Assembly (NCBI RefSeq): GCF_030144855.1
Contig: NC_082738.1
Span: 16,678,001 to 16,742,000, forward strand
Direction of reading: 5' to 3'
DNA length: 64,000 nucleotides
Origin: Hypanus sabinus
Lineage: Eukaryota
Below are positions 3,017-56,100 of this stretch, one piece after another. Made by a program: the position numbers and the translations under genes. The first letter of the stretch is position 1. Every line of letters begins with the position of its first letter. The notes beneath the pieces are model-generated. The model searched no databases. It was not told where the DNA came from and was given only the letters and a program-made list of their open reading frames with translations.

Positions 3017-3475
3017 TTATTTGCAGACACTGACCCACTCATTGACTCTGCACTCATCACACAACACGTAGCAACACCAGTGGAAACGGCAGTTGCATCG
3101 CTCACTCCGGCTCTGTTTGAGGATGTTGTGCCCTCTCCCACAGCACAGACTGTCACAGTTATCCATCCCTTGGCTCGTTTTATTGCACACCCTTCCCTGT
3201 GTCCCTGGTGAGTCCGTGCCGAGGTCCTTCTCGCAGAAATCAGGGGACTTCTCGAAGTACACCATGTCCTTGTAAATCCGTCTCCTGTTTTGCTTCAGGC
3301 TGAACTGGCCTGTGTTTCTATTGTGAGTTTTGATGAAAACTGCGTTCTGGAACCGCTCCTTGAGCACAGCCCCGACCTGTCGGAAATCAGGGGTCACTTG
3401 CCAGCAGGTTTTGAACTGGCAACTGCCAGAGGTGCCGTGACATTTACACTTGCGTTTCATGTTGTCAATGACCGC
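3017..3475 (-). CDS. wnt10b: wnt10b last coding exon ([19 protein letters not shown]...VSVCK*)
   Basis: Wnt CKCHGxSGSC lipidation motif and C-terminal Cys array; acceptor tttcag|; TAA at 3017-3019; 459 nt. Confidence 0.96.
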
Positions 3476-6400
3476 CTGAAATTTAGAAGAAAAGCAATCA
3501 AACAGAAATACCGTAGGAAGCACTAGTGCAATGAATAGAGTGCAAACCCCTCTCCAGCACTCTCTAAACACAACAGACTAAGAGGCTAACACCTCAATTA
3601 CCAGAATACAATTGCTCCCTTTAAATACAAAAACGTCACTGGGAAAATGGAACAATAATAATGTGCATTTTATATCTCCTGTAATGAAGTTAAAAGCTTT
3701 TAAAGATACTTCACGTAAGTGTTGACACACAGAACAGTTGCCAAGTTACTTAAGGGGATAGGAGAGCAGATTACCACATTTTGAAGAGAAAGGTAGGCTT
3801 AAGAAGCATTTAAAAAGAGGAGACAGAAGCAGAAAAGTTTTAGGAGGGAATTCACGAGCTTGGGGCATCAGAAGCTAAAAAAACAGCCACCAATAGAGGA
3901 GGCGATTCAAAGATAATCAAGAAGCCAGAATTAGAGTTGGATAATGTCTCAGAGGGTTATGGGACAGTGAGTACTGGAGAGATGAGAAATGGGACCTGGT
4001 GCATGTTAGAGAACAGGCACCCGAGCTTTGGATGGCCTCAGGTTCATGGAAGACACGTGAGAAAGGCCATCCAGCAGAGCACTGGAAAGGTCAAATCTAG
4101 AGACAAAGTCTAGAAGCAAGAAAATTACCCAAGTGCAGGCAATATGAAAAAGGTATGCCCACATCCATAATGAAAGAGGGAGAATGCCTGGGATGTGAAC
4201 GTACAGGAACTTGAAAGCCCAGATGACCAGACTCAAGAACGGCTTCTTCCCCACTGCTATCAGGCTTCTGAACCAATCACCTCTTCCATATCCCTTCCCA
4301 GTGGATTTATAGTATGTGAAATTCGTTGTTTTGCAGCAAAGATGTAAATAACACTATAGCTTACAAAATAAATAATGCAAATAAAAAAGGAATGACAATA
4401 GAGTGTTCATGGGTTCATGGACCATTCAGAAATCTGCTGGTGGAAGAGAAGAAGCTGTTCCTGAATTGTTGAGTGTGGGTCTTCAGGCCATAACAGCAAC
4501 ATACAGTGCATTGAACGTTCAGGCCAATCCATTAACTTAGTGGTCAAGGGAATGAGATTTTTAATATTAAAACTTTCAATATATCATGAGTGGATTGTTT
4601 TGCAATATTTGACACTTTGTCGTTCTCACTTTGCAGCACCGTATGTGATGTGTTTGTCGTGATAGATATATCTTTCCAGTTGTGTATTATCTGTAGTTAA
4701 TTGCATGGGCCTTCTGCATCGCCTATATGGCATTTGATGACTGGCATCTCAGAATCAGAATCAGGTTTATTATCACCGGCATGTTACGTGAAATTTGTTA
4801 ACTTAGTAGCAGCAGTTCAATGCAATACATAATCTAGCAGAAAAAAATAATGATTAAAAGTTAAAAATAAATAAATAAACAAGCAAATCAATTACATATA
4901 TTAAATAGATTTTTTAAATGTGCAAAAACAGAGATACTCTATATTTTAAAAAAGTGAGGTAGTGTCCAAGGGTTCAATGTCCATTTAGGAATCGGATGGC
5001 AGAGGGGAAGAAGCTGTTCCTGAGTTGCTGAGTGTGTGCCTTCAGCATTGTTATTATCGATGTTTGACTACAGATGTCTTCTGGCTTAGTGAGTATTTTT
5101 ACATTTTTTTTCAGTTGCCTTTCTGTGCAGATGTGGTTTATTTTCTTGCTGATGTGCATTTGCAAGCTCACTTTGATTTGGTTCTTCTGCTGGCATGTGT
5201 TGCTGACTGATCATTATATAAAATTTATTTCCACCATCCAACCCCCTGTTCATCTGCTGCTCATCTGTAGCTTTGTGTGACTGTAAGGGTTGACTACTTC
5301 AATGCTCTCCGGTACCAGCACAACACCCTTCCCAACCCCAGTTTGCTCCAAACTCTGCTGCCCATTTCCTGTCACACAGGGTTCTGCTCAATTGCCTTGA
5401 ATGGGTGTGTCTTGCTGATCTACACTGTTTTCCCATTCTTGTTAGCTTCAATTTTTAAACCCCTCTATTTCCTCTCCTGTGACCTCTTCCTGTGCTCCAG
5501 ATGGAGCAGACTTAATAGGTCAAATGGCTTAATTCTGCTCCTATGTCTTGTGGTCTTCCAGCTTTACAGCCCTCGTACTCCTCTGATCTGGCCTCTTGCA
5601 CAATCCCACATTTATTTGCTCACTATTGGTCGCAGTGCCTTTAGATCCTGGTTCCAGGTTCTGCTTTCACAAGGTCATTCATCACAGAAACGGGCCCTTC
5701 AGCCCATTGAGTGCGTGCTGACCATCAAGCACCCATATAGTAATCCCATTTTGCTCTCCCCACATTCCCATCAAATCACCCCCAGATTCTGCTACTCACT
5801 GACACACTAGGGGCAAGTTACAGCAGCCAATTAATCTAGCAACCCACAGACCTTTGCGATGAGGGAAGGCACTTGAATTGTGAAGGAGAAAGAGATTGAG
5901 GCCCAGTTGGTGGTGGGAGTATCAATGCACTTGGGGGTGACTTGACAAGGAGAGAGGGAAAAGAACAGAGGTTCGTGCTCATAGATTTGGATGTTGCCAA
6001 ATGGGAGGAGGTTGCATTGGTGCATAAGCAGAACGGCCTGGTTCTGTGCACTAATGTCAGCAAAGAGATGACTAAGCACTTAACAATCCTCCAAGCTCAA
6101 CACTAGTTCAGGACTTTCAGAATACAATACACCATGCCTGGATGTATATTTTGTCCTTTTTAACAAAACATCAATCAATACCCTCAAAATTAATAGAAAT
6201 TTTGTAGAAGGATCTAGATAGAATGAATAGAAAAGACTTATTCTCATCAGCAGAGGGATCCAAAGTTAGGAGGTAAAGGTTTAGAGTAGCTGACAGAAAT
6301 AGTGGGAAGCTGGGTGTGTGGGGCACATTATCAAAAAGAATGATGGAGGTAGAAACTATGGACACACTTGAGAGCTATGAGCAGCAGGCAGTCCTGTAGA

Positions 6401-9400: not shown

Positions 9401-12400
9401 CAACCCTTGAGTCATAGATTATCTACAAGTAGCCACCACAATAAACTAGAGCTACTGTGAACTCTGTCTCTGCAAGTCCTCCAAATCCATTAGCAGAATA
9501 AGGGAACCAACAGCAGTGTCCTTTCCCTAGTCAATATCCCCAGCAGCAAAGCCTAAATTATACTAAGTTGGCCACATTAGGCAGGCCACAGCATTTGCCT
9601 GCAGCTCACCTGACTCCTGAGACACACTCTTCTCCAAACTCCACCATGGAAAGAGACTGCCAGTGGACAAACTTCCCAAAGCCTCATTGCAGAAGTCCAA
9701 CACTCCCCACCATCTTGTGGGAATGCCTGGCCCATGATTCTCAAATGTGGAGCAGAAGCTTGAAGAGTGGCTCTAAGAGCTTTATCCATTTGTCAGGAGC
9801 ACACAGGAGCCCAGCATAAACAATGCAAGGAGTACACCTTCTCACAAGCTATTGACAACCACTCTTGTCACCCATCTCCTACCCCACTTGTGCAAGAGTC
9901 TGCAGGTCTCACATTGGCCTCCCCAGTCACCTCTGAGCCCATAGAGAAAGCAAGTCATCTTCAGTCCTGAGGGACTGCCCAAGAGAAATCCAGCATTCAA
10001 TAACTGCACTGAAATAGAAGTTACCTAAACAGAATAACTATAATTTTATAATCTTGTCCTGATTTATTACATGCCCAGTCCCGAAGAAGGGTCTCAACCC
10101 GAAACTTCGACTGTCTGTCCATTTCCGTAGACGCTGCCTGACCTGCTGATCTCCTCCAGCATTTTGTGTTTGTGGCTTTGGATTTCCAGCACCTGCAGAA
10201 TCTCTTGTGTTTATAATTTTACATTACTTTTTGAAAAGAAAAAAAACCGGCATTAATCCAGCAGGAATAGGATTTATTTGTCACATGCAGTGAAATGCGC
10301 CATTTGCGTCAACAACCATCCTTGGAAGGATGTGCTGGGGGCAGCTCACAAGTGCATCAACATAGCATGCCCACCACTTACTAATCCGTACATCTTTGGA
10401 AAGTGGGAGGAATCTCACATGGTCATGGGGAGAATGTACAGGCAGCAATGAGAATTGAACCCCGATCTTGTCAAACGAAGTGCGAACTGTGACACTATCG
10501 CGCTGTTGATGAGCACTTATAGCGCTGCTAGTGCACATTTTAGCGCCAGGAACATACACATTAATGCAGTTAAGCTGTGGTATAGACAAGCCCCTGCCCC
10601 TGCTTGTTTTCCATTTTGACGGGTTGCTGGCATCTATTTATTGCATCCCCTGAACAGAAAAGCTTGTTTGACTTTTTCAGAGTGTAGTTAAGAGTCTGGA
10701 GTCAAATGTAATCAAGAGCAGGGAAGGACAGCAGGCATACTCCCTTAAAGACATTCCTGAAAGTAATTTCCTGGCCACCATTAACCAACTTTGTTATTCC
10801 AAATTTACCTAAGAAATTGAATTTAAATTCCTCAGCAAGCAATGGTGGGACCTGAACTCAATGCCTACAGGAAAATTGCCCATACCTCTGGATACTTATC
10901 AAGTAACAGCCACTTTGCCACCATATACCCATTTAATTGAGAGGAGAGTTATTCATTTTACACTTCAGAGGGTAGTTGACTGAATGGTTGAGACAGAGGT
11001 TCCAGCAGATTTGTGGCTTCTAGCAGGATATTGCCATTACACACAAATCCTCCTGTCACAGCTCAAAACACTGAGAATCCATTTTGTAGACATTCAACAT
11101 TTTTTTGGGTTAAAGCATTGAGCATTATGCCAATTGACTGGCCAGTGCATGTATTCACCATGGGTGGCCTACCTGCCTTCCCAATTTGTTGTTGTGGAGT
11201 CTCATCCTCCCATGGATATCCCTCGATGTCTCTCGTGAGTCCAGAAAATCCCTGGAAAATTTCTCTGCAAACTCGATGTCATGGTTGCAGTCACCCCATT
11301 CCCACGAGTCCTGGATCCTAGAGAAAAGTCCCTCAGGCTTAGGAACAGAGACAGGGAGACCCTGGGTCAAGGCCTGTACCCGAAGTTGGTAGAGTTTGAA
11401 TCGCAAGTTCTGCTCATCTCCTCCTCTCTGCTTCTGGTCACATCCGCAGCCTTTCAGCTTCCCCAGGCTGCAGGCAGTGGCTACCGAGTGGGTGACCCCA
11501 GCAGCCAACAGGGAGAACATGAAGGCACTTTCACGGAACCCTGCATGGATGACAATAAGGTGGGAGTTGAAAGAGGGCTACTAAGAAATGTGCACAGAAA
11601 CTCATCTTATAGACGGTTAATGCTTAGCAACTTCCAATAATGCAGCATTTGGCTCTCAGCCTGCTTGGCACAGACAGTTCTCACTGTGACCTGATTGCCT
11701 TAAATGTCTCTTAAAGTCTGATGACCTCATCAATGCATAACTTATTGGTGTCTTTTTAAAGTGTTACTCCTGAATCTATAGTGTCTCCTGGAATCTTGCT
11801 AGCTGAGTTGGACTTGGCATTGTGGGGTCTAGATGGGCTCTGGCCTTCTGGAGGTGTATAGAACTGCCAGGATCAAAAGATCATTGGAGAGGGAGAGAGA
11901 GCTCAGAAATCGGTGAATGAGCTCATCCTTGAATGTGCATTACAAGATTCTGTCCAATAGAATAGGTTTTATTTTGATGCAGGTGATCTACCTGGACCAG
12001 AACTGCACCATACCCAGTAAAAGGACCTCTGTTCAGGAATACCATCACCTGTAGATAAGATGGGCAGGCAGGGAGGACACCTGCATGGTCAGTTTGGGCT
12101 AGGAGATGGCCTCTGGCACAATACCACACCTGGACATGATGGATGTAAAACAGGAAATGATGGAAATATGCACCAGGGCATCTAGAGAGAGAAAAAGAGT
12201 TAATGTTTGAGGCCATTTTCTATTTTTATAGGAAGGACATTACTGCACTGGAGAGGGTGCAGAGGAGATTCACCAGGATGTTGCCTGGGAAGGTGGGTTG
12301 CAGTTATGAGGAGAGACTGGATGGGCTGGTTCTGCAAGAGTACGTTTTGGAATAGCCAGGGCATACACTAAGTATTGAGTGGAGCAAGGTGAAGCAGAAA

Positions 12401-15400: not shown

Positions 15401-16327
15401 CTTGCAAGTATCAACGGTACATAAACGAAACCCAGAGCGCGGTGCCACCACGTGTGTGTGTGTGTGTGTGTGTGGGGGGGGGGGGTAACTCGAAATGGAA
15501 ATCACACCGCCCATCTCCCTCAAGTCTTTACATCTCTTGTACATATATCTTGACTGTCCCTTTCCCATTTCTACTCCTAAATTCCATCCCGCCTCATTCC
15601 GTCGTTTTGCTGCTTGCGGAGGATGTTAGGAGGTTACAATTTTCTATTTTTTTCTTCCTACCTAAATTTATCTACCTATTCTATCCACCTTCCCCTTGCA
15701 CCTGAGCACCCACTGCCCAAACACGTTTCAGGGAAAATCCCTCTGGATCAGACATGCGCCTCCCTTGTTAACCCTTGCAGCCCCATAGCGGCGTGCATCC
15801 TGAGGCAAAAAATCAAAACGTACTGTACCTCTGTTCAGGATGACGGTGTCCTGCAGGATTTTTCCACCGTTTTCCAGGGTCGAACAGTTCCATCTCTGAT
15901 CCCAGAGCTGGTGCTGGCATTCGTGAATAGCGATCTGAATACCCTGAACCGCAGCCGCCGTGACATCAGGGCTCCTCACACACAACCCCATCTGGCGTCT
16001 GCTCAGTCCCGGCAGCGTCAGACAGACCGTGTTGGCAGTCAGGATCGGGTCTGCAGGTATCTTCAGCCCCAGGATCTCATTCCCGGCCACACTACACCGG
16101 AGAGAAATCATCAAACAAAAACATGTTTACTAATACACATGTTAGCCAAAAGAAAGAGTAAACGCGTTTTATAACTCTACTTTTCTTCTTTAATATTTCA
16201 ATTAAAAAGGACCATTTTTAAACCTGGCACAATGATAAGCAGCCACGCTAATTGTTTCTTACCGATAGACGGTGAGTGAGACGGTGAGAAGCAGAGTTGC
16301 GTGTCCTGAGGTTGGGAAAACTGCCAT
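3017..16327 (-). CDS. wnt10b: Wnt-10b, whole spliced CDS: join(16263..16327, 15829..16091, 11173..11540, 3017..3475); 65+263+368+459=1155 nt, 384 aa
   Basis: All junctions are GT-AG and keep frame (phases 2,1,0). [48 protein letters not shown] and [12 protein letters not shown] are Wnt10b-type rather than Wnt10a-type (NDILDLRLP, QMEVCVRHPDVAA). Divergent orientation to wnt1, as in mammals. Confidence 0.93.
3665..3960 (-). mobile_element. L2-type LINE 3' end, old
   Basis: aaaggtaggcttaagaagcatttaaaaagagg...tttaggagggaattcacgagcttgggg pattern. Confidence 0.5.
4750..5047 (-). mobile_element. Rex1-type 3' end with (TTCTGA)n tail; related pieces at ~4205-4490
   Basis: [16 protein letters not shown] in ORF 4974..5171; agaatcagaatcagg tail. 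Confidence 0.75.
6965..7270 (+). mobile_element. tRNA-derived HE1/V-type SINE (other copies at ~5670-5860, 10300-10510, 23000-23200, 47000-47195, 50720-50990, 63030-63330)
   Basis: gctgcctcacag...gagtttgcac.ttgtccctgtgacc..gggatttcc..cttcccaaatcccaaag family motif repeated across the window. Confidence 0.65.
7920..8770 (+). mobile_element. CR1-type LINE, 5'-truncated RT C-terminus and 3' UTR
   Basis: [36 protein letters not shown] and [31 protein letters not shown] across frameshifted ORFs. Confidence 0.92.
9780..9990 (+). mobile_element. RTE-type LINE 3' end (decayed C2H2 tail)
   Basis: acttgtgcaagagtctgcaggtctcacattggcctc..agtcacc reads [14 protein letters not shown], then gtcatcttcagtcctgagggactgcc. 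Confidence 0.55.
10076..10113 (+). ncRNA. Minimal type I hammerhead ribozyme motif (core variant) in a PLE 3' end (~10074-10211)
   Basis: Stem I CAGTC/GACTG encloses CCGAAGA-A-GGG..CCC-GAAA-CT-TC. Confidence 0.6.
11173..11540 (-). CDS. wnt10b: wnt10b coding exon 3 ([14 protein letters not shown]...HNNKLGRQ)
   Basis: ORF 11155..11520 plus upstream GFRESAF; acceptor atgcag|, donor CAG|gtaggc; 368 nt. Confidence 0.95.
14670..15060 (-). mobile_element. Deu-domain SINE (SacSINE1/AmnSINE1-like), old
   Basis: tgttgtaatgtgggaaacgatgcagccaatttgcccacagcaaaatcccacaa matches the Deu-SINE central domain as I recall it; orientation is inferred. Confidence 0.7.
15829..16091 (-). CDS. wnt10b: wnt10b coding exon 2 ([10 protein letters not shown]...TVILNRG)
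   Basis: Inside ORF 15728..16114; acceptor gtgtag|, donor AGAG|gtacag; 263 nt. Confidence 0.95.
16263..16327 (-). CDS. wnt10b: wnt10b coding exon 1 (signal peptide [22 protein letters not shown])
   Basis: gccATGG Kozak context at 16327, hydrophobic stretch, phase-2 donor CG|gtaaga matching the phase of the next exon. Not in the ORF track; found by reading the minus strand. Confidence 0.82.
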
Positions 16328-16978: not shown

Positions 16979-17418
16979 NNNNNNNNNNNNNNNNNNNNNN
17001 NNNNNNNNNNNNNNNNNNNNNNNNNNNNNNNNNNNNNNNNNNNNNNNNNNNNNNNNNNNNNNNNNNNNNNNNNNNNNNNNNNNNNNNNNNNNNNNNNNNN
17101 NNNNNNNNNNNNNNNNNNNNNNNNNNNNNNNNNNNNNNNNNNNNNNNNNNNNNNNNNNNNNNNNNNNNNNNNNNNNNNNNNNNNNNNNNNNNNNNNNNNN
17201 NNNNNNNNNNNNNNNNNNNNNNNNNNNNNNNNNNNNNNNNNNNNNNNNNNNNNNNNNNNNNNNNNNNNNNNNNNNNNNNNNNNNNNNNNNNNNNNNNNNN
17301 NNNNNNNNNNNNNNNNNNNNNNNNNNNNNNNNNNNNNNNNNNNNNNNNNNNNNNNNNNNNNNNNNNNNNNNNNNNNNNNNNNNNNNNNNNNNNNNNNNNN
17401 NNNNNNNNNNNNNNNNNN
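16979..17418. other. Assembly gap (N-run); others at 23949-24100, 38060-38209 and 38488-38648
   Basis: Runs of n. Confidence 1.
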
Positions 17419-23725: not shown

Positions 23726-24751
23726 TCATCTACTCTCCTAGTCAGCTGCTCAATCCCGGCATTATCTCATACAGATAGACAGATGTCCACATCTCATGTG
23801 CTTGCCCGATCATCTACGTATATCAATACGCACCTCTTGCACACGAAGCATCCGCGATGCACACGCTATATTTGTGTATACTTCCATATAGCAGCACTGG
23901 CTCTTCAGGCAAATAGAGCTTTATATGCAACGACTCCAATTTCATTACNNNNNNNNNNNNNNNNNNNNNNNNNNNNNNNNNNNNNNNNNNNNNNNNNNNN
24001 NNNNNNNNNNNNNNNNNNNNNNNNNNNNNNNNNNNNNNNNNNNNNNNNNNNNNNNNNNNNNNNNNNNNNNNNNNNNNNNNNNNNNNNNNNNNNNNNNNNN
24101 AAGGGCAAAAACTTCCACCTTCCATTGTCATAGCTGACAGGGAGAGTGTTTATTCAATGCGCGCTCCCGAAATTGCTCCAGGTGCAGTTACTGGAAATTC
24201 CCCAGCACCATTCGCCTTCAAATGGATGAGCTGAAAGCAAAATTCAAAGAGTTATTGCAGTAACACATTTTTAAATCGTTTAAGTGATTTGATGTGTTTA
24301 TGGTCGGAACTAGTAGCACATTACGGTCTAGTGACCTACTGGTGTCCGTTACTGTACAAGCCAACAAGTCAAGAGGTTAGAAGACAATAAAATATAATTA
24401 ACTTTTATTGGTTTATTTCCCTCATTATTTGATTAGAAACATGTTATTTAAACAAATTTGTGCATCCATTAAAACCAGAAAAAATTGTATAACACTCTGA
24501 GCCATTTGCACCATAATCAGAATTAGGGCGGAATCTATCATAGATGACGGCATTGTTCATCAGATTCTTTAGCCATCACACGAGAGTAGAAGGTGAGGGT
24601 CAATGAGTGCGGTCTTTCCGTAACCAATAATTTATTTTCACAGGCCTGCCTTCACTTGGGCCATGACATGTCAACCTTACCACCAACTGCAGCATACAAT
24701 GTGAAAATGTCAACATAGGGTAATGTCCTTTAAACAGATGACCTCTAACTT

Positions 24752-27353: not shown

Positions 27354-27815
27354 CTAAACGCAGACACTGAGTTCCTTTCTGACTGTGCATTGTTTGCACT
27401 GGACCACACAACACCACTGGAAACGACACTTGCAGTTCTCCTGGAAGCTTACCATCTCTTTTCGGTGTCCCCGGCCACAACAGAGCAAGTCACAGCCACT
27501 AAAGTCCAGCGCTGTCCCGTTACATACTCTGCCCCTTGTCCCTGGGACGCCAGTGCGCCTGTTGGGCAAACAGAAATCGGGGGACTCTGCGGAGTAAACC
27601 AGGTCTTCTTTGTCCGGCTGTTTGATGTTGTGGCCGACCGGGATCAGGGTCTTTCCGTCGTTGCCGCCCATCACCTTGAAGGCCCCATTGAAGCGTTCGA
27701 AGAGGCGGTCACCGACCTCGCGGAAATGGGGCATTTTCTTCCAGCAAGTTTTGACTGCACAGGAGCCAGATAAGCCGTGACATTTACACTCAGTCCGCAT
27801 ATAGTTCTTAATCAT
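27354..27815 (-). CDS. wnt6: wnt6 exon 4 (MIKNYMRTECKCHGLSGSC...ELSVCV*)
   Basis: ORF 27354..27815; acceptor atttcag|; TAG stop; full C-terminal Cys pattern. Confidence 0.96.
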   Translation of the reverse strand: MIKNYMRTECKCHGLSGSCAVKTCWKKMPHFREVGDRLFERFNGAFKVMGGNDGKTLIPVGHNIKQPDKEDLVYSAESPDFCLPNRRTGVPGTRGRVCNGTALDFSGCDLLCCGRGHRKEMVSFQENCKCRFQWCCVVQCKQCTVRKELSVCV

Positions 27816-33800: not shown

Positions 33801-36800
33801 TACGTTATAAAGTCTCCGGCTTTTTTTTTTGGAAAATAGTAATGTTACTCACCTGTTTAGCCCACCAAAATAAATCCTGTATGCGTACCAATAGTTTGTA
33901 CGTGATCCACTGGTTAAGCACCCTTCCGCTTTGGATCATATTGGTGTGGCTAAGCATTTAAACGATCAATTTGCAATATATTATTTACTACTTGGGTCCA
34001 GATCAATATATTCAACAGAATTGTTGTTATGCTATATTGAAAAAAAATTAGATTTAACATGGCAAAGTATGTGAACATACACAAGGATTTCATGTTTTGA
34101 CAAAGTGAGATTGTATGAATGTATTTAAGTTTGAAAGAAGATCAAAATCGATGAGAAACTTGGAACTGCACTGTATTAGAGCATTCCCTTTCTGCTAATG
34201 GAAAATGTGTTCCAGTACAGTGCAGCCTGTGGATTAAAAACTCTTTTGTGTGGCAGCTGCTTGGGTTTCTAAGTGGAATTAATTTTGAGAGTCTCAACTG
34301 GTCTCCAAACACCACTAAGTTGACAGCTACAAACAAAAAGAGCATAATGATGCCTTCTGAAAGGAATAGCAATGTTACCCATGACAGTACTGACCTGGTC
34401 AGGGGTGCAGCAGAAGAGCTGTGGAATCCATAACAATAAAATCCTTCATCTTGACAACTACATTTATCAAAAGATATGGTTTTCATATAGGGATGTAACA
34501 TCTGTGGGAAGGGACTGGTTATCTCATATCTAAATTAGTTTTGGACCATAACAATCCATTGGAATCTCTCCCAATCCTTAATCTCTGTACTATTATTTTG
34601 TGCATACTGATAGATTATTTCAATGCTATTAATTCTCTCTTATTGTTGTATTTAATATAATTATCTTGCACCATGCAAGTTACAAATTGTGGTATAGATC
34701 AATAATACTTATTGATACTTCCAGAATTCAAACTGTACAATCAGTATCTATCATGCAACTAGCAAATTCAGTTTACATGAATTTCAAGCTCTGGCTAGTA
34801 ATATATAATTACATATAAATGCAGCCACTGTATATACTGCAGTGTACATTTAGATAAACATGTTGCAATTCTCATAAACCCTTGGGAATTAAACAGGTCA
34901 GGCTGTCAGATGAGAAACTATTTTGTGAAATTGCTGGGTGGGACTACTGCAAATTGCTCAAAGCAGAGACCATTTTAATAGATGCTTTTAAGATTGAGAG
35001 ATTTTGATAGGGTAAACAATGGGAGGCAGGTCACATGTTCGAAGAGTCAGTGACCAATTAATTTAGGATTATTAATAATGGAGTTAGGAGAAATTTACAC
35101 AGAGTCACAACATGAAATGTTTTGCCACAGAGGGTATTTGATGCAGAGATAATTATATCTTTGCGGGGAAGTTAGATCTGTACTTAAAACAAAAAAAAAG
35201 GTGCAAAGCTATGGGAGAGAGAACAATATTGGAATTTTGCTTGAATTTTAGTTAAGCATGGAGATATGCAGACATGACAGGCAGGGGAGTCTCCTTGTGT
35301 TATGTAAGGCGCTATAGTCCTTTGAGGGCAAAAGGCAAGGCACATTGCTATTCACTTAATAATACAATTCTTTCTGGCAAAGGGGTTATATAGAATCTAA
35401 AAGCTTGAAAGAAGCTCAGTTTTTTCATACATTTTTTTCACATGATGTGGGTGTAATTGGCTAGCCCAACATTTATGCTCATTCCTGTTTGCCTCTCAAG
35501 TCAGCCACATTGATATGAGTCTGGAGTTGGCCAAATTAGGCAAGCTTTATTAGATTTCTTTCAGTGATCAACAATCTCGTCATTTCCTGGTCACCATTAC
35601 AGATGGGTCTTATTCCATTTTATTCTGATTCCAGATTATTGAATTGGCTGAATTCCTCAGATTCTATAATATTTGAACTCATGCCTTTAAGTCATTATGT
35701 CAGGCTTCAGGATTACTAAAAGTAAAAAAAAACTGCAGATACTAGAATTCTGAAATAAACATTTAAAACACCAATAACACTCAGCAGGTCACCTGTTAAC
35801 TCTGTGCTTTTCTCTCTCCACAGATGCTGCCTGACCTGCTGAGTATTCTCTTTTGTTTCAGATTTCCCACAGTTGCTGAGAATAGTATCTCACTGCTCAG
35901 CATTTTTCTGGCTCTCCCCTGTTCTCATCCACTTCCTATTTACATCTCCCCCAGTCAGATAAACCTTCAGCACCCTCTCTCAGCCAGCGCCATTTGTGAC
36001 ATTCTTTCTCTCTTGGTCTCCATGCTACCACGGCCATTTCCCTTCTTCTCTCTACACACCACTCCTCTCTCTGCAACAAAAACAAAACGTTCGTTCCCCA
36101 CCTTTACCTTGTTCACCTGAAAACCTTCAATCGAACCCTTCTTTCTCTCCTCACAGTTGCTGCTGGGTAAGTAAACATTGAATTGCTTGTACAGCACCTT
36201 AACCACTGTACCCCATAGTAACTGTTAAAACAAACTTTGGTATCTTACCACTCAGTAAATGCCGGAAACTAAATGTGAATATGAAGGGGGTGTAGATACT
36301 ATTTAACCAAATCAGTAACCAGCTAGCCAAAATGAAAAAAAAAATGCGGATACAACAGTAAGGATCAATATTGGCGGAAGTTGGAATGCTGGAAGCAGAA
36401 AATGACGGTATCTACCGAGTGTGTGTGTGAGAGAGTTTTCAAGCATTTAATTTGTGATGACCTGCCTTCAGAACTGTGGCTGTTAGCATTAGATGTCTAA
36501 CCGGCGAACGGCCCCACGAAGTATCCGACTGCCGCTCTGGTAGCGGTGATGAGAATCTAATTTTAAACATATGCAGAAGATTACAGATAATTCTAGACCT
36601 CAACCTACCAGCCGGCCTGCCTCGTTATTATGCAGGTCTATCAAGGACTTGATGTCACTTTGACCTTTTCTCTTCCTAGCGTCCATGAACTGTTTGGACT
36701 TAGCATAACCGAACTCCACGTTGTCTCCACATCCGCTCCATTGCCAAGGGTTCGCGTCCCTGGACGGTCCGAGAGCTGGAGCCATTGCAGCCCGGCTCAG

Positions 36801-39522
36801 ATCGTTCTCACAGCCGCACTGAAGCAGCTCTCCCCTGCTGCATGCCTGAGTCACAGCGTACACAACACCAGCGGAGGTGATAGAGTAAACGAAGGCCGTC
36901 TCCCTGATGTCTGCAAAATGGGAAGGAAGGGGGTCAGTATTGCGAAACGGTGTTAATGCTTGTTAACACACGTGACATCGTTGTGCATCTAATTATTTTC
37001 ACACGCATAAAGTTACTTCTCATATTCTACATACAGGCATACGATTCAGCCCAAATGATTAGTTTATATGCTGCAGAGGCTACACCCAAATCCCCCAAAC
37101 CATAAACTCCTCACCATTACCTTCTATAATTTTATCTCTCTTCCCCTTAAACCCACTGTGGTAAGGAGTTTGCATTCTAACTACACTCCCTGTAAAGAAA
37201 CATCTCAATTCTTGCCATCACCTTGTTTATCCCCATTGTAGTTTTTTAAAAAATATACGTAGGAAATGCTAAAGATTTTTCCTAAATTTTCGTCGTGTCT
37301 TTTTTTTGCTGTTCAAACTAATTTTTTTCTGTTTGTAATGTAGTTAAATTGATGGGGAAATGATTCCGGTTTAACCCTTTGCAGTAGAAGTAAAAAACAT
37401 CCGACCATCAGTAGGAACACAAGCTTGGTGTTGATAAGCCATTAGCTGAAGCACAAGAATGGATTGTGAGCCGGCCTCGGCACAATTGACCGCACTCTAT
37501 TTCTTGGTCGGATAACCTTGGGTTCAAAGCTCGCTCTAAGTTCTGGACAGACAATGAGAGGATACCGCGCTGTCGGAGAACAGTGTTTTCGACGAGAGTT
37601 CAAGCTAATGCACTATCTAATGTGAACATGAACGGTCCCTCAGGACTAGTCCCACTAATTCTACTAATTTTTTCATTGGTGCTTGTGGAACTTTCCTGTG
37701 CGTAAACCGGCTCCCGTGTTTTCTCCCTTACAACAGTGACCATCATTTTTCATTGGCCGTAAAGTGTCTAGGGATGATTTTTTGAAGCGATAAAATCCAA
37801 ACCCTTTCCTCCTATGTTGTAAATCACACCTAGAAATTTAAATACTATCGGTTTCTTGTTTATAAAATAAAGAGCGCGCGAAAGCCATATCAGAGCAAAA
37901 AAAAGAATATCCTGCCCCTCTCGCCATACGGCTCCCAAGCCTTCCTTGATATGTCTGTCTGTCCGTCTCGGTCCGTCTGTTGCTCGATCTTTTGTCCAGT
38001 CTGGACTAATTTCTTATTTAGTTCAGGGTTCCACCTACTGATCTACCTGTGTGACAGTCNNNNNNNNNNNNNNNNNNNNNNNNNNNNNNNNNNNNNNNNN
38101 NNNNNNNNNNNNNNNNNNNNNNNNNNNNNNNNNNNNNNNNNNNNNNNNNNNNNNNNNNNNNNNNNNNNNNNNNNNNNNNNNNNNNNNNNNNNNNNNNNNN
38201 NNNNNNNNNGTTAGCATTCCGTTGGCCCCGGAATTGCCCCTCTCACTGTTGCTGGGTGTCCTCACACTTGTTTCGGCGCCTCCGGGTAACATTCACACGC
38301 AGAAAGGCTTGACCCCTACTTCTTCCCTTCGGGCTTGACATTCTGGTCATTTTTCGCCTGCGACCCTTGTCTCGGCTCATACAAACAGTTAGTATCTCCT
38401 GTCGCATCTTCAAACCCACGACGAACTTCAAATACTTTAACTCGTTTTTAAATACATTCGTTCGAGTAACGCTTGGAGAAAGAATGGNNNNNNNNNNNNN
38501 NNNNNNNNNNNNNNNNNNNNNNNNNNNNNNNNNNNNNNNNNNNNNNNNNNNNNNNNNNNNNNNNNNNNNNNNNNNNNNNNNNNNNNNNNNNNNNNNNNNN
38601 NNNNNNNNNNNNNNNNNNNNNNNNNNNNNNNNNNNNNNNNNNNNNNNNTGTTGAAGAAGTTTCCCGAAGTATTTGTGGATAGTGCAGTTCCATCTGCGGA
38701 ATCGGAACTGGTACTGACACTCCCTGATCCCGTGCCGGACTCCCTTCGCCACCTCGCCCACGATCTCTGGTTCGGTTTGACACAGCTCGGCTTGCTTACC
38801 AGCCAAGCGCTTTGTTTTCCTGCAGATACTGTTGGGGTCCATCACCAGTGGGCTCCCCACGGCCCTGCAACGCGATATTTAAAGCAAAAGCCCATCGGGC
38901 AAGAATAAAAGTTACTCCATCCCAGTAAACCCCTAGTACACCTTGTACCCTTCTGGCTTCAGTCCCCCTGACCGGCTTTTGGTACAGTCAGACTGAACGG
39001 CGATTGGACCCAATACTGCTGAACTGAAATAACATTAAAGTCTTACTTGAAACGGAAGATACGCGTAGATGTGATGCTGCAGCCAGCCAATGTAAAATCA
39101 GCCTAGAGCTCTAAATCCTATTAAATAAGGTTAGTGGCATTTTCGTGAGTGGTTTCTTTGATTGAGTTTTGTCTGAGTCCGTTCAAGGTAACTCTGGGAT
39201 AATCCCAGCTGCAGGTGCCTTTGTATAGATACCGGGGAAGGGTTGTCAGCGCAGAGATCTCACGCACTGAATCCCTCTACCTGGCGTGTTCGCGTCTCAC
39301 TCTCTCAAGAAATCTTTTCCACAATTTTCCACCCACAGAGATCAAATATCAACCCCTCACCCCCACCCCACTACCACCCAAACATTCCCTTTTCATCCAG
39401 TAATGAGGCAACCGAAATAGCACAAAGTAACACTAACCGACTTACCACCAAAGACTGATGATATTCGCTGGACATAAAAGAAAGAAGAAAAATCCCAGCT
39501 GAGCTCCCGCAAAAGGCACCAT
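27354..39522 (-). CDS. wnt6: Wnt-6 (probable second vertebrate paralogue), spliced CDS: join(39446..39522, ~38647..38864, 36609..36910, 27354..27815), about 352 aa
   Basis: LWWAVGSPLVMDPNSICRKTKRLAGKQAELCQTEPEIV, QQDIRETAFVY and MRTECKCHGLSGSC are diagnostic of Wnt6. No stops or frameshifts in the visible sequence; visible splice sites are canonical. Confidence 0.92.
29254..29595 (-). mobile_element. Tc1-family transposase fragment with a small palindromic terminus (29255-29310)
   Basis: STERQFCWRKHLVNKRGQRRIARLV and VQNSISELT..TLK..WMGYSSRK resemble the Tc1 DNA-binding region. Confidence 0.8.
30038..30106. mobile_element. 69-bp Tc1/mariner-type MITE
   Basis: Perfect 16-bp TIR CAGTACTGTGCAAAAG / CTTTTGCACAGTACTG; partial copies at ~29603-29624 and ~41210-41260. 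Confidence 0.8.
32740..33320 (+). mobile_element. CR1 LINE 3' fragment
   Basis: LRLYKTLVRLHMEYCEQFWAPY..LKRVQRRF; LPQAVVEAKSLG. Confidence 0.9.
33613..33807. mobile_element. PLE-derived fold-back insertion with a decayed hammerhead motif and a 10-bp TSD
   Basis: Inverted arms ~33656-33709 and ~33749-33801; TSD TAAAGTCTCC at 33603-33612 and 33808-33817. Confidence 0.8.
36609..36910 (-). CDS. wnt6: wnt6 exon 3 (DIRETAFVYSITSAG...HNNEAGRL)
   Basis: ORF 36600..36863; acceptor ttttgcag|, donor CTG|gtaggt; 302 nt. Confidence 0.95.
37480..37800 (+). mobile_element. Deu-domain SINE, old (further fragments at ~13790-13880, ~27940-28250, ~58720-58810)
   Basis: gcttgtggaactttcctgtgcgtaaaccggct...cttacaacagtgac is the reverse complement of the 14750-14810 core. 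Confidence 0.6.
38647..38864 (-). CDS. wnt6: wnt6 exon 2 (AVGSPLVMDPNSIC...YFGKLLQQ); 3' end inferred because it runs into the N-gap at 38648
   Basis: ORF 38243..38860; acceptor ttgcag| at 38865-38867; last visible base 38649; two more nt needed to join exon 3 in phase 1. Confidence 0.9.
39446..39522 (-). CDS. wnt6: wnt6 exon 1 (signal peptide MVPFAGAQLGFFFFLLCPANIISLWW)
   Basis: gagATGG start, Wnt6-type signal peptide, phase-2 donor TG|gtaagt; 77 nt. Confidence 0.93.
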
Positions 39523-52200: not shown

Positions 52201-53508
52201 AATTCTACCAGGAATCGTCTTCACATTCTGACAGCTGAACATTTAGTTAAATACTCCATTGATCATCTTTTTTGTTTTTAAAAAAAGTCCTTTCTGGCTG
52301 TGGAGACCAGGGAGGAAAGTCAAGCGGGATGATAACGGTTAAAGACGAAAGAATTGGGTATCTACGATTTAAAGAATCTCTGCACTTTCGCTGAACCTAT
52401 CTACAACTTTAATTCAAATCCAAATCATCGACCTGAACTGAGACAAACCAAGAGAGATATTATAAAATGTCTACTAGTTTTATCATACGTATCTGCAATG
52501 CCAGTTTTTTTTTTGAAAATGAGTTTGAAAAGCAGAAATCAATCAACTTTAGTCCAGATAAATTGGACTACAATATCTCATATATAAATATATCGCAGCA
52601 GTCACAGTAAAAACGATTCCTCCCTGATTAATATTTTGGGTTTAACTGAGGGGTGGTAGGAGGCGGGAATGGTTTCCTTATTTGTTTTCCTTTTAAATAT
52701 GAATATATTCAGCTGAAGATAGCCCTGAAAGAAACGCGAGCTTTTCGGGCTCGGACACACTGAGGGCGACCTTCAGCAATCTTCACTGTTCAGCCAAAGG
52801 AAAACGCGAAGCTGCGGCAGAGGCGTCCGGAATCATTTAAGTCTCAAGATCTGTCGGCGATTCCCAACGTATAACAGACGCAGTTTGAAAATGCTCTTGA
52901 TAAACAATGTAGGAAGCAACGCCAGAAACGATTCCTTTCGACGCGCATCTTCTCATTGTGCCCTGGTTATCTGAAGATCAGATTCAAAGATATATTTTTC
53001 TCGAAGAAACGTTTGTCTCGCTGTGGGAATAAATGAGGCTGATTGCTACAGAATTGTTTCAGTTACATAGCAGTAGCTTATTGCAGTTGCCCGAAAGTTA
53101 TTGAACAATAGGAGTGAAGTGGTCTTACATGGACATTAACCGTTTTAATCTGCTGTCTTTCAACTAGTGGATGATGGACAGATTGATGGAAAGCTCTTGC
53201 GTCCCATCTCGCAGGCAATAGGGGAAAGAATGTGTCGCGTTTCTACCATTGTTCCTCTAAACTCGGAGGCTTGCCGACACTTTTTTTTAAAGCTCTTTAT
53301 GCAAACTTATAAGCGCCGGGACGTCCCAGTTATGAGGCGCCTGTGACCAGGTTGGAGAGGGCGCGCCAAAAGCTACCTGTTCCCCTTAAGTTTACCTCCG
53401 AAACGTAATTATTTTGGGGGAGGGGAGGGGAACGGCAACTAACTTAATCCATATTATATATGCTGTAAATATATATTTACTTTATGATCATTCCTAACCA
53501 GCAGCATC

Positions 53509-53600
53509 ATGAAATTAGTTCTGGGATTCAAGACTCTGTGGTTTCTGGCGTTCTCTTCACTTTCCCACACACTGGCAGTAAATAACAGTGGGAGATGGTG
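53509..53600 (+). CDS. wnt1: wnt1 exon 1 ([31 protein letters not shown])
   Basis: atcATG start, signal peptide, donor TG|gtaagt; 92 nt. Confidence 0.92.
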
Positions 53601-56100
53601 GTAAGTTTTGACCAATATTAGTCGTCAGTGAAAACAATTTAGCGCCTCTTTAACAGGGGTAAAACAGGTGCGAAGTTATTAAATAATGATGGGAATCGAA
53701 AACATTGAGGTTGTTTATTCTGTTCATTGTTTTATTTCAGGGGAATTGTAAACATTGCGTCTTCTTCGAACCTATTGATCGACTCGAAATATGTCCAACT
53801 GGTCTTGGATCCAAGCTTGCAGCTGCTGAGCAGAAAGCAGAGGAAACTGATCCGGCAGAACCCGGGCATATTGCACAGTATCACAGGAGGGCTGCAGAAC
53901 GCCATCAGAGAGTGCAAATGGCAATTCCGCAGTCGACGCTGGAACTGTCCAACATCTCAAACTCCTAACGTCTTCGGCAAAATCGTTAACCGAGGTAGGC
54001 TCTCTTAGACGAGAATGAGAATATTTAATCCTGACAGGTGTCAACCAGGGGTACTCCAGCATTAGATCGCAACAGGCGAATTTCATATGGAAGTACTAGT
54101 CAAACCACCTCAAATCGCCCTAACCCTCAGTATCACCGGGTCACTCTGACGAGTGCAGCCTAGACTTGATCGAGAGGAAGACCCTGATCGGTATACTTAT
54201 AATAAAAAAGAAAACACTAGAGATATTCAGCAGGCCGGGCAGCATCTGTGGAGAGAGAAACAGACGCAATGTTTCAGGTTGATGAGCATTTCCATCATGT
54301 TTTGTGTTTTGTGTTAACTGTTTTGGATATAATCCAAGCCAGTCTAGTGTAGCCCGGTTCCCTATAGAAACTCTGATCCCACTAACGAGGTTACCCTGTG
54401 CACCAGGTGTGAAAGCAGATGTAGATGAGGACAACGGGCTCTCATTGATACACAAGCTGGGTCCATAGCGAAATCCCAAACAGAAGAAGCGATTGTTGTA
54501 CCCAAACTCTTCCTGAACCATATGAGCGCCCTATCTGAGAAGAGTCTGCCTAAGCCTGTCTAGGCTGGGAGTTCAGGGAACACCGATCCAGTATACTCGG
54601 TTCATATGAGACCGATCGGAAAGAGGTCTGATTTCGTGTAATGACCTGATTTATGTACTTGCCCAAGTTAAAGTTTCTTTTAACGCACAAACCCAGTTAT
54701 TACCCGGCTTGGGACTAGATTTGAAACGAAGCAGATTCGCTTTCCAGAGACACCCCTGGTCTTGGGGCATGTCCTGAAGTCAAATGGAGAAACTGAAATG
54801 CCAGGAGCTGCCACCTCAACAATCACAATTAAATCAAAATCCACTTGGTTATTAATGTTCCCTCTTCAACTAGGTGATCCTCTTAGAGTTGGTATTAGGG
54901 AGGTTTCCAACCTGATCCTAGTGCAGGGAAAGGGTCTGTCATTGAAAGCAGAGAGCGCTGGAAGCACACGGGATGTGCACAGGAGCTGAACTTTTATAGT
55001 TTGGAATTTCCAACCTCGCATTCCTGTTTGTTGCGAATCAATATCAACACCCAAGCTGGAAGGGTGAAACGGCCGCTCTGGGATCTGATACCGAGCAGAT
55101 TGATTTGGGTGAAGGTTAGTTTTCATCTTCACATTGTTTGTGGAGCAAAGACACACTCCTCAACCAGAGTCTCGAAAAACTACCCTGCACTTACTGGAAG
55201 CGCCGGTTCCAAGATTCGGAACACTGTTTGGGATTAGTGCCTGGGCTTCTGTTAAACCCACCCGTTCAACAGTTTTACACAAAGTTTGACTCACTTTTAG
55301 TTTAGAACTCTAGCCAGGCTTCTTTCTGCTTCCAATTCCCGCATTCTTTGGTTCTCGCTGTTGCTTTTTCTGCATCTCCCTTTCTACCCCTTTCTCCGTT
55401 TTCCGCTTTTTCGCGTTGTCTCCCTAATTTGCTGGTGAATTTCGCCCCTCCGGTTCTCCAGAGTTATGCTTGGTTCTCAGGCTCTCAACCATTCACTCCA
55501 TGTGGCGCCTGTCAGGTTTTTCCTGCATTTCCGTACGCATTTCGCACTTTCAACCTCAGTTTAGTTCTTCCAGAGCCCAACGGCTGTGCGCCTCCCCGCT
55601 TTTCTGCGTCCAGTATTGCGCCAAGCTCGCTCGCTGCGCCGTTCCCAGTCGGAGGTTCTTGCTCTCGGTTTCACCTTCTCTCTCTCCATTGCTTTGCTTG
55701 CCTCCTGACCCTGGTTCCGGCCTTCAATTTTTCCTTCTCCCCCGCCACATCTTAAAGTTAATCCATTCTCTGGTCGTCTCTTTCTAATTCTTGGTACTTT
55801 CTCTAACGTCTTCAATCCCTGTCCTCCCCTGCAGGCTGCCGGGAGACGGCCTTCATTTTCGCGCTGACCAGTGCGGCAGTGACTCATTCGGTATCTCGCT
55901 CGTGTTCCGAGGGCTCCATTGAGTCGTGTACGTGCGATTACCGACGGCGGGGACCCGGCGGACCAGACTGGCACTGGGGTGGGTGCAGTGACAACATTGA
56001 TTTCGGCCGCGTCTTTGGCCGCGAGTTCGTGGACTCAAGCGAAAGGGGACGAGACCTGCGCTATCTGACCAACCTGCACAACAACGAGGCTGGCAGACTG
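53509..56100 (+). CDS. wnt1: Wnt-1, partial spliced CDS: join(53509..53600, 53741..53994, 55835..56100); exon 4 lies beyond the window
   Basis: [37 protein letters not shown] and [37 protein letters not shown] are diagnostic of Wnt1; canonical GT-AG, phases 2,1,0. Confidence 0.96.
53741..53994 (+). CDS. wnt1: wnt1 exon 2
   Basis: ORF 53727..54008; acceptor tttatttcag|, donor CGAG|gtaggc; 254 nt. Confidence 0.96.
55835..56100 (+). CDS. wnt1: wnt1 exon 3 ([23 protein letters not shown]...HNNEAGRL)
   Basis: ORF 55879..56115; acceptor cccctgcag|, donor CTG|gtaacg; 266 nt. Confidence 0.96.

What the first reader, a model, noticed from the sequence alone, without database searches (positions are those of the whole stretch)
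3017..56100. Intact ancestral Wnt10-Wnt6-Wnt1 three-gene cluster with a probable second Wnt6 ohnologue
Seen: a Wnt6 ORF with no visible lesion lies between wnt10b and wnt1. It is upstream of and co-oriented with wnt10b (~11 kb from the wnt6 stop to the wnt10b start) and divergent from wnt1 (~14 kb between start codons). Established: Wnt1-Wnt6-Wnt10 linkage is ancient (Drosophila wg-Wnt6-Wnt10). Human/mouse keep only the complementary pairs WNT10B-WNT1 (head to head) and WNT6-WNT10A (tandem), with a single WNT6. The layout here is the exact superposition of those two pairs. Inference: this lineage kept the Wnt6 copy that mammals lost from the Wnt1-Wnt10b paralogon after genome duplication. That would mean an extra Wnt ligand and a direct view of the pre-loss cluster. 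I cannot verify whether this has already been reported.
Basis: partly seen in the sequence, partly recalled or inferred. Interest (0 to 1): 0.88.

Follow-up and report, generated by a model that had tools for sequence, protein, structure and literature searches.

The report
Stingray Wnt10b-Wnt6b-Wnt1 cluster, already known
The window holds a real, intact three-gene Wnt cluster from the Atlantic stingray, with an extra Wnt6 copy that mammals lost, but this gene is already annotated in many sharks and rays and already published as wnt6b.

Summary
The minus strand carries wnt10b (CDS 3017-16327) and, upstream of it, a Wnt6 gene (27354-39522). Wnt1 exons 1-3 (53509-56100) lie divergently on the plus strand. 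All visible splice sites are canonical. One gap removes about 2 nt and the donor site of Wnt6 exon 2. Wnt1 exon 4 lies outside the window.

My spliced models match RefSeq proteins of Hypanus sabinus at every readable residue: Wnt-10b, Wnt-6-like and Wnt-1.

- The Wnt10 gene falls in the Wnt10b clade.
- The Wnt6 gene falls in a chondrichthyan plus coelacanth "Wnt-6-like" clade. That clade is separate from the canonical Wnt6 that horn shark and elephant fish also have.
- The same arrangement is collinear in a skate chromosome.
- Wnt-6-like and Wnt-10b share a contig in about 16 chondrichthyan-lineage assemblies.
- Gar has wnt1 and wnt10b head to head with no Wnt6 relic.
- dN/dS is 0.058, so the gene is under purifying selection.

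It is not new. The skate genome paper calls wnt6b a "previously characterized" retained ohnologue. A 2025 preprint lists Wnt1, -6b and -10b as X-linked in elasmobranchs.

I could not test whether this stingray itself has a canonical Wnt6. The protein tree alone does not reject a chondrichthyan-only duplication (AU p = 0.139).

The parts
3017..3475 (-). wnt10b exon 4 with stop codon (3017-3019)
   Evidence: [10 protein letters not shown] and CCGRGH motifs; acceptor tttcag; Pfam wnt E = 8e-60
11173..11540 (-). wnt10b exon 3
   Evidence: tblastn; cag acceptor and gtaggc donor; carries WEWGDC in place of WEWGGC
15829..16091 (-). wnt10b exon 2
   Evidence: RWNC motif; splice sites
16263..16327 (-). 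wnt10b exon 1 (ATG at 16327, signal peptide)
   Evidence: ATG/donor scan; the full model is 384/384 identical to Hypanus sabinus Wnt-10b P0476
16979..17418 (.). assembly gap 1, about 650 nt upstream of the wnt10b ATG, non-coding
   Evidence: flanks collinear with Rhinoraja
23949..24100 (.). assembly gap 2, in the Wnt6-wnt10b intergenic region
   Evidence: flanks collinear with Rhinoraja
27354..27815 (-). wnt6b (Wnt-6-like) exon 4 with stop codon (27354-27356)
   Evidence: CKCHGLSGSC motif; Pfam wnt E = 1.3e-59
36609..36910 (-). wnt6b exon 3
   Evidence: tblastn; splice sites; Pfam wnt E = 8e-30; carries WQWSGC
38060..38209 (.). assembly gap 3, inside wnt6b intron 2
38488..38648 (.). assembly gap 4, cutting off the last ~2 nt and the donor site of wnt6b exon 2
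   Evidence: exon 2 reads ...CTTCAACA and then N; the phase of exon 3 requires 2 more nt
38649..38864 (-). wnt6b exon 2 (3' end truncated by gap 4)
   Evidence: RWNC and ECQYQF motifs; ttgcag acceptor
39446..39522 (-). wnt6b exon 1 (ATG at 39522, signal peptide, GTAAGT donor)
   Evidence: 350/350 readable residues identical to Hypanus sabinus Wnt-6-like X2 P0443
53509..53600 (+). wnt1 exon 1 (ATG at 53509)
   Evidence: GTAAGT donor
53741..53994 (+). wnt1 exon 2
55835..56100 (+). wnt1 exon 3; exon 4 lies beyond the window
   Evidence: residues 1-204 are 100% identical to Hypanus sabinus Wnt-1 X2 P0599, and the C-terminal part has no plus-strand match
30769..31766 (.). conserved non-coding block in wnt6b intron 3
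   Evidence: 79% identity over 1031 nt to the skate locus, while coding dS is about 1
33979..35265 (.). conserved non-coding block in wnt6b intron 3
   Evidence: 77.7% identity over 1301 nt to the skate locus
52559..53403 (.). conserved block just upstream of the wnt1 ATG (likely promoter or 5' UTR)
   Evidence: 80% identity over 865 nt to the skate locus

Best explanation
The window is a piece of an Atlantic stingray (Hypanus sabinus) chromosome. It carries the jawed-vertebrate Wnt1/Wnt10b paralogon in its pre-loss state: wnt1 lies divergent from a Wnt6 gene, which lies in tandem upstream of wnt10b.

The middle gene is the one RefSeq names 'Wnt-6-like' and the shark/ray literature names wnt6b. 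It is the second vertebrate Wnt6 ohnologue. Cartilaginous fishes and the coelacanth kept it. Ray-finned fishes and tetrapods deleted it, which left WNT1 and WNT10B head to head.

Shown here: gene order, intact reading frames, clade membership, conservation of the layout across chondrichthyans, purifying selection, and absence of the gene from gar.

Inferred: the gene encodes a working secreted, lipid-modified Wnt ligand. It has a signal peptide, every conserved Wnt cysteine, the CKCHGLSGSC acylation site and both N-glycosylation sites. Also inferred: it dates from the early vertebrate genome duplications rather than a later local copy. That rests mainly on its ancestral position and orientation and on the coelacanth orthologue.
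For: Identity of the genes:
- Gene models with canonical splice sites.
- Pfam wnt matches.
- 384/384, 350/350 and 204/204 identity to H. sabinus RefSeq Wnt-10b, Wnt-6-like X2 and Wnt-1 X2.

Phylogeny:
- In the Wnt10 tree the window gene joins Heterodontus and Rhinoraja Wnt-10b inside the Wnt10b clade (SH-aLRT 99). Shark Wnt-10a sits in the other clade.
- In the careful Wnt6 tree, chondrichthyan Wnt-6-like plus Latimeria H3BIA9 form a clade (88/95). It is separate from Heterodontus plus Callorhinchus canonical Wnt-6 (97/86) and from bony-vertebrate Wnt6 (86/93).

Two Wnt6 genes in relatives:
- Heterodontus has Wnt-6 on a 142-Mb contig, and Wnt-6-like on the 37.75-Mb contig that also bears Wnt-10b and Wnt-1.
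- Callorhinchus has both genes.

Conserved layout:
- Rhinoraja CM130204.1 reads wnt1, then divergent Wnt-6-like (3,477,326-3,454,489), then Wnt-10b-like (3,435,557-3,419,472). It is collinear with the window.
- Wnt-6-like and Wnt-10b share a contig in about 16 elasmobranch assemblies, and Wnt-1 is shown on the same contig in about 10 of them. In Callorhinchus, Wnt-6-like and Wnt-1 share a contig. Accession numbers are often consecutive.

Loss in a bony fish:
- Gar has wnt1 and wnt10b head to head with no Wnt6 relic.

Function:
- dN/dS is 0.058 for wnt6b and 0.060 for wnt10b, stingray against skate.
- The window gene keeps all 25 conserved Cys columns of the alignment, the acylation motif and the N-glycosylation sites.

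Literature:
- PMC10115646 and bioRxiv 10.1101/2025.03.13.642935.
Against: - The protein tree alone does not reject a single chondrichthyan-only Wnt6 clade (AU p = 0.139).
- The three gnathostome Wnt6 groups form an unresolved trichotomy.
- A canonical Wnt6 in H. sabinus itself, and its adjacency to wnt10a, were not shown. A 10-kb flank upstream of zebra shark Wnt-10a holds no Wnt6 exon.
- Linkage of the coelacanth gene to Wnt10b is suggested only by adjacent UniProt accessions.
- Two nucleotides and one splice donor of wnt6b are unread.
Confidence: 0.9

Rival explanations
1. The middle gene is a lineage-specific (chondrichthyan) duplicate of canonical Wnt6 that landed between wnt1 and wnt10b. 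On this reading it is not a 2R ohnologue.
For: The AU test does not reject all chondrichthyan Wnt6 and Wnt-6-like sequences as one clade (p = 0.139, delta lnL 12.4). The two horn shark copies are 81% identical.
Against: - The gene occupies exactly the ancestral slot and orientation, divergent from Wnt1 and tandem with Wnt10.
- Latimeria H3BIA9 groups with it (88/95).
- The best tree keeps canonical Wnt6 of sharks, chimaera and bony vertebrates together (73/76).
Confidence: 0.06
2. The three-gene layout is an assembly artefact or a recent translocation specific to this assembly.
For: There are four N gaps in the region, one of them touching a Wnt6 exon.
Against: - The window is collinear with an independent skate chromosome over positions 2-53403, including across every gap.
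- The same gene order and orientation are seen in the skate.
- The genes share a contig in about 16 chondrichthyan-lineage assemblies.
Confidence: 0.01
3. The pair is the canonical Wnt6-Wnt10a pair, and the odd one out is an extra Wnt1 ohnologue.
For: Some stretches of the Wnt10 protein look Wnt10a-like by eye. This is my recollection of the human sequences, not a test.
Against: - The Wnt10 gene is inside the Wnt10b clade (SH-aLRT 99), and shark Wnt10a genes are separate and on other chromosomes.
- The Wnt1 part is identical to the annotated Wnt-1, which belongs to the one Wnt-1 cluster at 90% identity that I found for chondrichthyans.
Confidence: 0.01
4. The Wnt6 copy is a decaying or non-functional gene that only looks intact.
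For: The otherwise invariant WxWGGC motif reads WQWSGC in myliobatiform rays (Hypanus, Hemitrygon, Mobula) and WQWEGC in Narcine. Two nucleotides and the exon 2 donor are unread.
Against: - dN/dS is 0.058 over 323 codons against skate, equal to wnt10b.
- All conserved cysteines, the acylation site and the glycosylation sites are kept.
- The terminal branch in the tree is short.
- The skate paper reports distinct expression for retained ohnologues including wnt6b.
Confidence: 0.02

Closest known systems
wnt6b / RefSeq 'protein Wnt-6-like' of cartilaginous fishes (for example XP_059811939 Hypanus sabinus, XP_078287444 Rhinoraja longicauda, GCC20381 Chiloscyllium punctatum)
   Same: It is the same gene. 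The model is identical at all 350 readable residues to the H. sabinus entry. It falls in the same clade, and it has the same neighbours (Wnt-1 and Wnt-10b) in every species checked.
   Different: Nothing substantive. The window copy lacks 2 nt and a splice donor because of a gap.
Mammalian WNT10B-WNT1 (head to head) and WNT6-WNT10A (tandem) pairs
   Same: The same subfamilies and the same relative orientations. This rests on established knowledge (Nusse 2001, Trends Genet 17:443, from memory). Gar shows the head-to-head wnt1-wnt10b pair directly.
   Different: Mammals and gar have no Wnt6 between WNT1 and WNT10B. The stingray has one, intact and under constraint.
Invertebrate Wnt1-Wnt6-Wnt10 (wg-Wnt6-Wnt10) cluster
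   Same: Linkage of the three subfamilies. Supporting observations: amphioxus and lamprey have Wnt9-Wnt1-Wnt6 clusters (PMC6060547), a bivalve has consecutive Wnt1 and Wnt6 locus tags, and a sea urchin has Wnt1 and Wnt10 on one contig.
   Different: The stingray cluster is one of two post-duplication copies, so its Wnt10 is specifically Wnt10b.
Zebrafish wnt6a and wnt6b
   Same: All are Wnt6 subfamily members, and one shares the name 'wnt6b'.
   Different: They are not orthologous to the shark/ray wnt6b.
- The teleost canonical-type gene is two locus tags from wnt10a in Electrophorus.
- The divergent teleost type sits between a chpf-like gene (Fringe and CHGN domains) and a cdk5r2-like gene. 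From my knowledge of human 2q35, this is the WNT6/WNT10A paralogon.
- Both teleost types nest inside bony-fish canonical Wnt6.
The shared name is a nomenclature clash.

Membership tests
Wnt ligand family (Pfam PF00110) | Wnt domain detected by profile | tested here: met
   Exon pieces of the Wnt6 and Wnt10 genes hit PF00110 at E = 1e-59, 8e-60 and 8e-30.
Wnt ligand family (Pfam PF00110) | Conserved cysteine framework, acylated serine motif (CKCHGxSGSC) and N-terminal signal peptide | tested here: met
   25 of 25 conserved Cys columns and CKCHGLSGSC are present. A hydrophobic N-terminus lies in exon 1; no dedicated signal-peptide predictor was run.
Wnt10b (as opposed to Wnt10a) | Groups with Wnt10b of other jawed vertebrates in a tree that also holds Wnt10a of sharks | tested here: met
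   The Wnt10b clade has SH-aLRT 99, and the window gene joins ray and shark Wnt-10b with 99. The model is 384/384 identical to H. sabinus Wnt-10b.
Wnt1 | Orthology to vertebrate Wnt1 | tested here: met
   Residues 1-204 are 100% identical to H. sabinus Wnt-1 X2 and 95-99.5% identical to other ray Wnt-1 proteins. The gene belongs to the chondrichthyan Wnt-1 cluster. No Wnt1 tree was built, and exon 4 is not in the window.
wnt6b ohnologue (chondrichthyan/coelacanth Wnt-6-like) | Falls in the Wnt-6-like clade, apart from canonical Wnt6 of the same lineage | tested here: met
   In the careful tree the Wnt-6-like clade has 88/95 with Latimeria, and canonical shark plus chimaera has 97/86. The AU test of a single chondrichthyan clade is not significant (p = 0.139), so clade separation is supported but not decisive.
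wnt6b ohnologue (chondrichthyan/coelacanth Wnt-6-like) | Lies between Wnt1 (divergent) and Wnt10b (tandem, downstream) | tested here: met
   Shown in the window and in the skate. Wnt-6-like and Wnt-10b share a contig in about 16 elasmobranch assemblies, with Wnt-1 on the same contig in about 10.
wnt6b ohnologue (chondrichthyan/coelacanth Wnt-6-like) | A separate canonical Wnt6 exists in the same genome, on the Wnt10a paralogon | not testable with these tools
   No tool searches this eukaryotic genome. Both genes are shown in Heterodontus francisci (different chromosomes) and Callorhinchus milii. Adjacency of canonical Wnt6 to Wnt10a in sharks was not seen within 10-kb flanks.
wnt6b ohnologue (chondrichthyan/coelacanth Wnt-6-like) | Absent from the same slot in bony vertebrates that lost it | tested here: met
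   The gar wnt1-wnt10b interval has no Wnt6 exon (best E = 0.096) and no DNA similarity to the stingray interval.

The most novel reading that the evidence does not exclude
wnt6b may be kept in cartilaginous fishes partly because its introns and flanks carry enhancers that serve the whole wnt1-wnt6b-wnt10b landscape. Two blocks of 1.0 and 1.3 kb in wnt6b intron 3 stay 77-79% identical between stingray and skate although synonymous sites are near saturation, and nothing like them remains in gar. A second strand: all elasmobranch Wnt10b proteins and the myliobatiform-ray Wnt6b proteins have changed the otherwise invariant WxWGGC motif. This could mean altered handling or receptor binding of these X-linked ligands.
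Probability: 0.15. Interest if true: 0.45.

Novelty: already known. Interest (0 to 1): 0.2.

Why it matters
The locus is a clean living example of the pre-loss state of a classic developmental gene cluster. It shows that the mammalian WNT1-WNT10B and WNT6-WNT10A pairs arose by reciprocal gene loss after genome duplication. This is already recorded in three places:
- RefSeq annotations of many sharks and rays.
- The little skate genome paper, which cites an earlier review.
- A sex-chromosome preprint that places Wnt1, Wnt6b and Wnt10b on the elasmobranch X.

The scan adds no new biology. Its useful by-products are the demonstration that shark/ray 'wnt6b' is not the zebrafish 'wnt6b', and a few leads on motif changes and conserved non-coding blocks.

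Tried and rejected
- Wnt1 exon 4: searched the window with Wnt6 and Wnt10 exon 4 and with the C-terminal part of stingray Wnt-1. There is no plus-strand match after 56100.
- Six other long ORFs in introns and flanks have no Pfam match.
- Canonical Wnt6 beside shark Wnt-10a: no Wnt6 exon within 10 kb upstream in zebra shark. The horn shark Wnt-6 locus returned no DNA and no neighbours within 10 kb.
- Look-ups for the red stingray and the coelacanth failed. Either no record matched the exact product or the sample file was too large.
- I deliberately did not fetch the public H. sabinus locus, so as not to read the letters under the N runs.
- The Kuraku 2021 review and Hara 2018 paper are not held in the library. 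The skate paper's supplements do not mention wnt6b.
- The AU test did not reject a chondrichthyan-only duplication.
- The Rfam scan found nothing at gathering thresholds.

Full report
**What is in the window**

The window has 42% G+C, depleted CpG with islands, and four N runs.

Motif scans of the six-frame translation and local tblastn found Wnt exons in three groups. Splice-aware modelling gave three genes in which every visible junction is canonical AG/GT.

- **wnt10, minus strand.** Exons are 16263-16327, 15829-16091, 11173-11540 and 3020-3475, with the stop at 3017-3019. The product is 384 aa.
- **Wnt6, minus strand.** Exons are 39446-39522, 38649-38864, 36609-36910 and 27357-27815, with the stop at 27354-27356.
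- **wnt1, plus strand.** Exons are 53509-53600, 53741-53994 and 55835-56100.

Pfam PF00110 matches the exon pieces at E = 1e-59 to 8e-30.

It is 11,027 nt from the Wnt6 stop to the wnt10 ATG, and 13,987 nt between the divergent Wnt6 and wnt1 ATGs.

**Gaps, tested first**

- Gap 1 (16979-17418) lies about 650 nt upstream of the wnt10 ATG.
- Gap 2 (23949-24100) is intergenic.
- Gap 3 (38060-38209) is inside Wnt6 intron 2.
- Gap 4 (38488-38648) abuts the 3' end of Wnt6 exon 2. The exon reads up to two bases of a codon and then N. The phase of exon 3 requires two more exon bases and then a donor.

I wrote X at the two affected codons and did not fill them. With the two X, the model is 352 aa and aligns without indels to 352-aa orthologues of other rays. 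The two sides are therefore in frame with each other.

Single-copy blastn matches to two loci of the skate Rhinoraja longicauda form one collinear chain. It runs from window 2 to 53403 against CM130204.1 3,415,535-3,487,309, with anchors on both sides of every gap. I found no sign of a misjoin.

Wnt1 exon 4 is not in the window. Neither paralogous last exons nor the C-terminal 166 residues of stingray Wnt-1 find a plus-strand match after 56100. The third gene is therefore only partly present.

**Whose genome**

A library-wide phmmer search with Wnt6 exon 4 supplied full-length seeds. Three profile searches and three cluster look-ups then gave named relatives.

My models match RefSeq proteins of Hypanus sabinus:

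| Model | Identity | RefSeq protein |
|---|---|---|
| wnt10 | 384/384 | Wnt-10b |
| wnt1 exons 1-3 | 204/204 | Wnt-1 isoform X2 |
| Wnt6 | 350/350 readable residues | Wnt-6-like isoform X2 |

Red stingray proteins are 99% identical. The window is Atlantic stingray, and all three genes are already annotated there. The Wnt-6-like and Wnt-1 isoforms carry consecutive accession numbers, and all three lie on one 69.7-Mb chromosome.

**Which Wnt10 and which Wnt6**

In a Wnt10 tree the window gene joins skate and horn shark Wnt-10b. This group sits inside the Wnt10b clade of bony vertebrates (SH-aLRT 99). Shark Wnt-10a proteins sit in the Wnt10a clade.

In a careful Wnt6 tree the jawed-vertebrate sequences form three groups:

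1. Canonical Wnt-6 of horn shark and elephant fish (97/86).
2. Canonical Wnt6 of bony vertebrates (86/93). A fast-evolving teleost clade is nested among the ray-finned fishes.
3. "Wnt-6-like" of sharks, rays and elephant fish together with coelacanth H3BIA9 (88/95). The window gene is here.

Horn shark carries both kinds. Wnt-6 is on a 142-Mb chromosome. Wnt-6-like is on the 37.75-Mb chromosome that also carries Wnt-10b and Wnt-1. Elephant fish also has both.

The tree alone is not decisive. Forcing all chondrichthyan sequences into one clade costs 12.4 log-likelihood units, and the AU test gives p = 0.139. The stronger argument is position. The gene sits in the ancestral slot and orientation next to Wnt1 and Wnt10b, and a coelacanth orthologue exists.

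**Conservation of the layout**

- In the skate, Wnt-6-like (3,477,326 to 3,454,489) lies upstream of and co-oriented with Wnt-10b-like (3,435,557 to 3,419,472). It is divergent from a 374-aa Wnt gene annotated as Wnt-1.
- Wnt-6-like and Wnt-10b share a contig in about 16 elasmobranch assemblies, and Wnt-1 is shown on the same contig in about 10 of them. In elephant fish, Wnt-6-like and Wnt-1 share a contig. Accessions are often consecutive, for example three in a row in Narcine.
- In gar, wnt1 and wnt10b are head to head. The interval between them has no significant Wnt6 match (best E = 0.096) and no DNA similarity to the stingray interval. This is the mammalian state.

**Is the gene in use?**

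- Stingray against skate gives dN/dS = 0.058 over 323 codons for the Wnt6 gene. The value for wnt10b is 0.060, with dS near 1 and 0.7 respectively.
- The protein keeps all 25 conserved cysteine columns of the alignment (one lies in the signal peptide), the CKCHGLSGSC acylation motif and both N-glycosylation sites.

I infer a functional secreted Wnt ligand. I did not examine expression myself.

**What is known**

- The little skate genome paper lists wnt6b among "previously characterized" retained ancestral ohnologues with distinct expression. It cites Kuraku 2021, Dev Biol 477:262. I could not read that review.
- A 2025 preprint reports Wnt1, -6b and -10b among eleven signalling genes shared by the X chromosomes of five elasmobranchs. 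It discusses the H. sabinus assembly. From my own knowledge, its other X-linked genes (Acvr1b, Acvrl1, Gdf11, Dhh, Gli1, Igfbp6, Stat2, Stat6) are human 12q13 genes, which is the WNT1/WNT10B neighbourhood.

**A naming trap**

Zebrafish-style wnt6a and wnt6b are both co-orthologues of canonical WNT6.

- The divergent type lies between a chpf-like gene (Fringe and CHGN domains) and a cdk5r2-like gene. I recognise these as human 2q35 neighbours of WNT6 and WNT10A.
- The canonical type is two locus tags from a Wnt10a-type gene in Electrophorus.
- Both nest within bony-fish Wnt6.

The shark/ray "wnt6b" is a different, older paralogue.

**Limits**

- I could not search this genome for its canonical Wnt6.
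- I could not show Wnt6-Wnt10a adjacency in a shark.
- I could not confirm coelacanth linkage beyond adjacent accessions.

**Verdict**

Novelty is "already known", and interest is low.

Noticed in passing
window 11173-11540 (wnt10b exon 3); proteins P0476, P0269, P0270 and others: The Wnt motif WxWGGC, which was unchanged in the Wnt10a and most bony-vertebrate Wnt10b proteins I compared, is altered in every elasmobranch Wnt10b examined. It reads WEWGDC in stingrays, sawfish and two sharks, WEWSDC in skates, and WERGDC in most sharks and Narcine. Coelacanth Wnt10b reads WEWSGC.
   Followed up: partly
window 36609-36910 (wnt6b exon 3): The same motif reads WQWSGC in myliobatiform-ray Wnt6b (Hypanus, Hemitrygon, Mobula) and WQWEGC in Narcine. 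It reads WQWGGC in sawfish and skates and WEWGGC in sharks, chimaera and coelacanth. This looks like a ray-specific relaxation at a normally fixed glycine.
   Followed up: partly
window 30769-31766, 33979-35265, 17548-17973, 22311-22546, 52559-53403: Non-coding blocks are 77-83% identical to the skate locus over 0.2-1.3 kb, although synonymous sites are near saturation. They are candidate enhancers or promoters of the cluster. None is detectable in the gar locus.
   Followed up: partly
window 10083-10168, 23377-23462, 23628-23713, 33655-33801, 61427-61477: A repeat unit of about 86 nt occurs several times in the window and dozens of times in the two skate loci. Two inverted copies form the arms of the fold-back element that another reader flagged at 23319-23739. 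Rfam gives no hammerhead match there even at E up to 1.
   Followed up: partly
window 56101-64000: Wnt1 intron 3 must exceed 7.9 kb, whereas introns 1 and 2 are 140 nt and 1.8 kb. The stretch holds repeat-derived matches to the skate loci and no Pfam-recognisable ORF.
   Followed up: partly
L003 (Danio aesculapii), P0185/P0361 (Electrophorus voltai): Teleost 'wnt6a' and 'wnt6b' both belong to the canonical WNT6/WNT10A paralogon. The shark/ray 'wnt6b' therefore shares a name but not orthology with zebrafish wnt6b.
   Followed up: yes
P0227 (Owenia fusiformis), P0542/P0192 (Potamilus streckersoni): An annelid gene model of 636 aa scores as both Wnt1 and Wnt6, so it is probably two adjacent genes fused by annotation. 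A bivalve has consecutive locus tags for Wnt1 and Wnt6. Both are incidental support for the ancient linkage.
   Followed up: no
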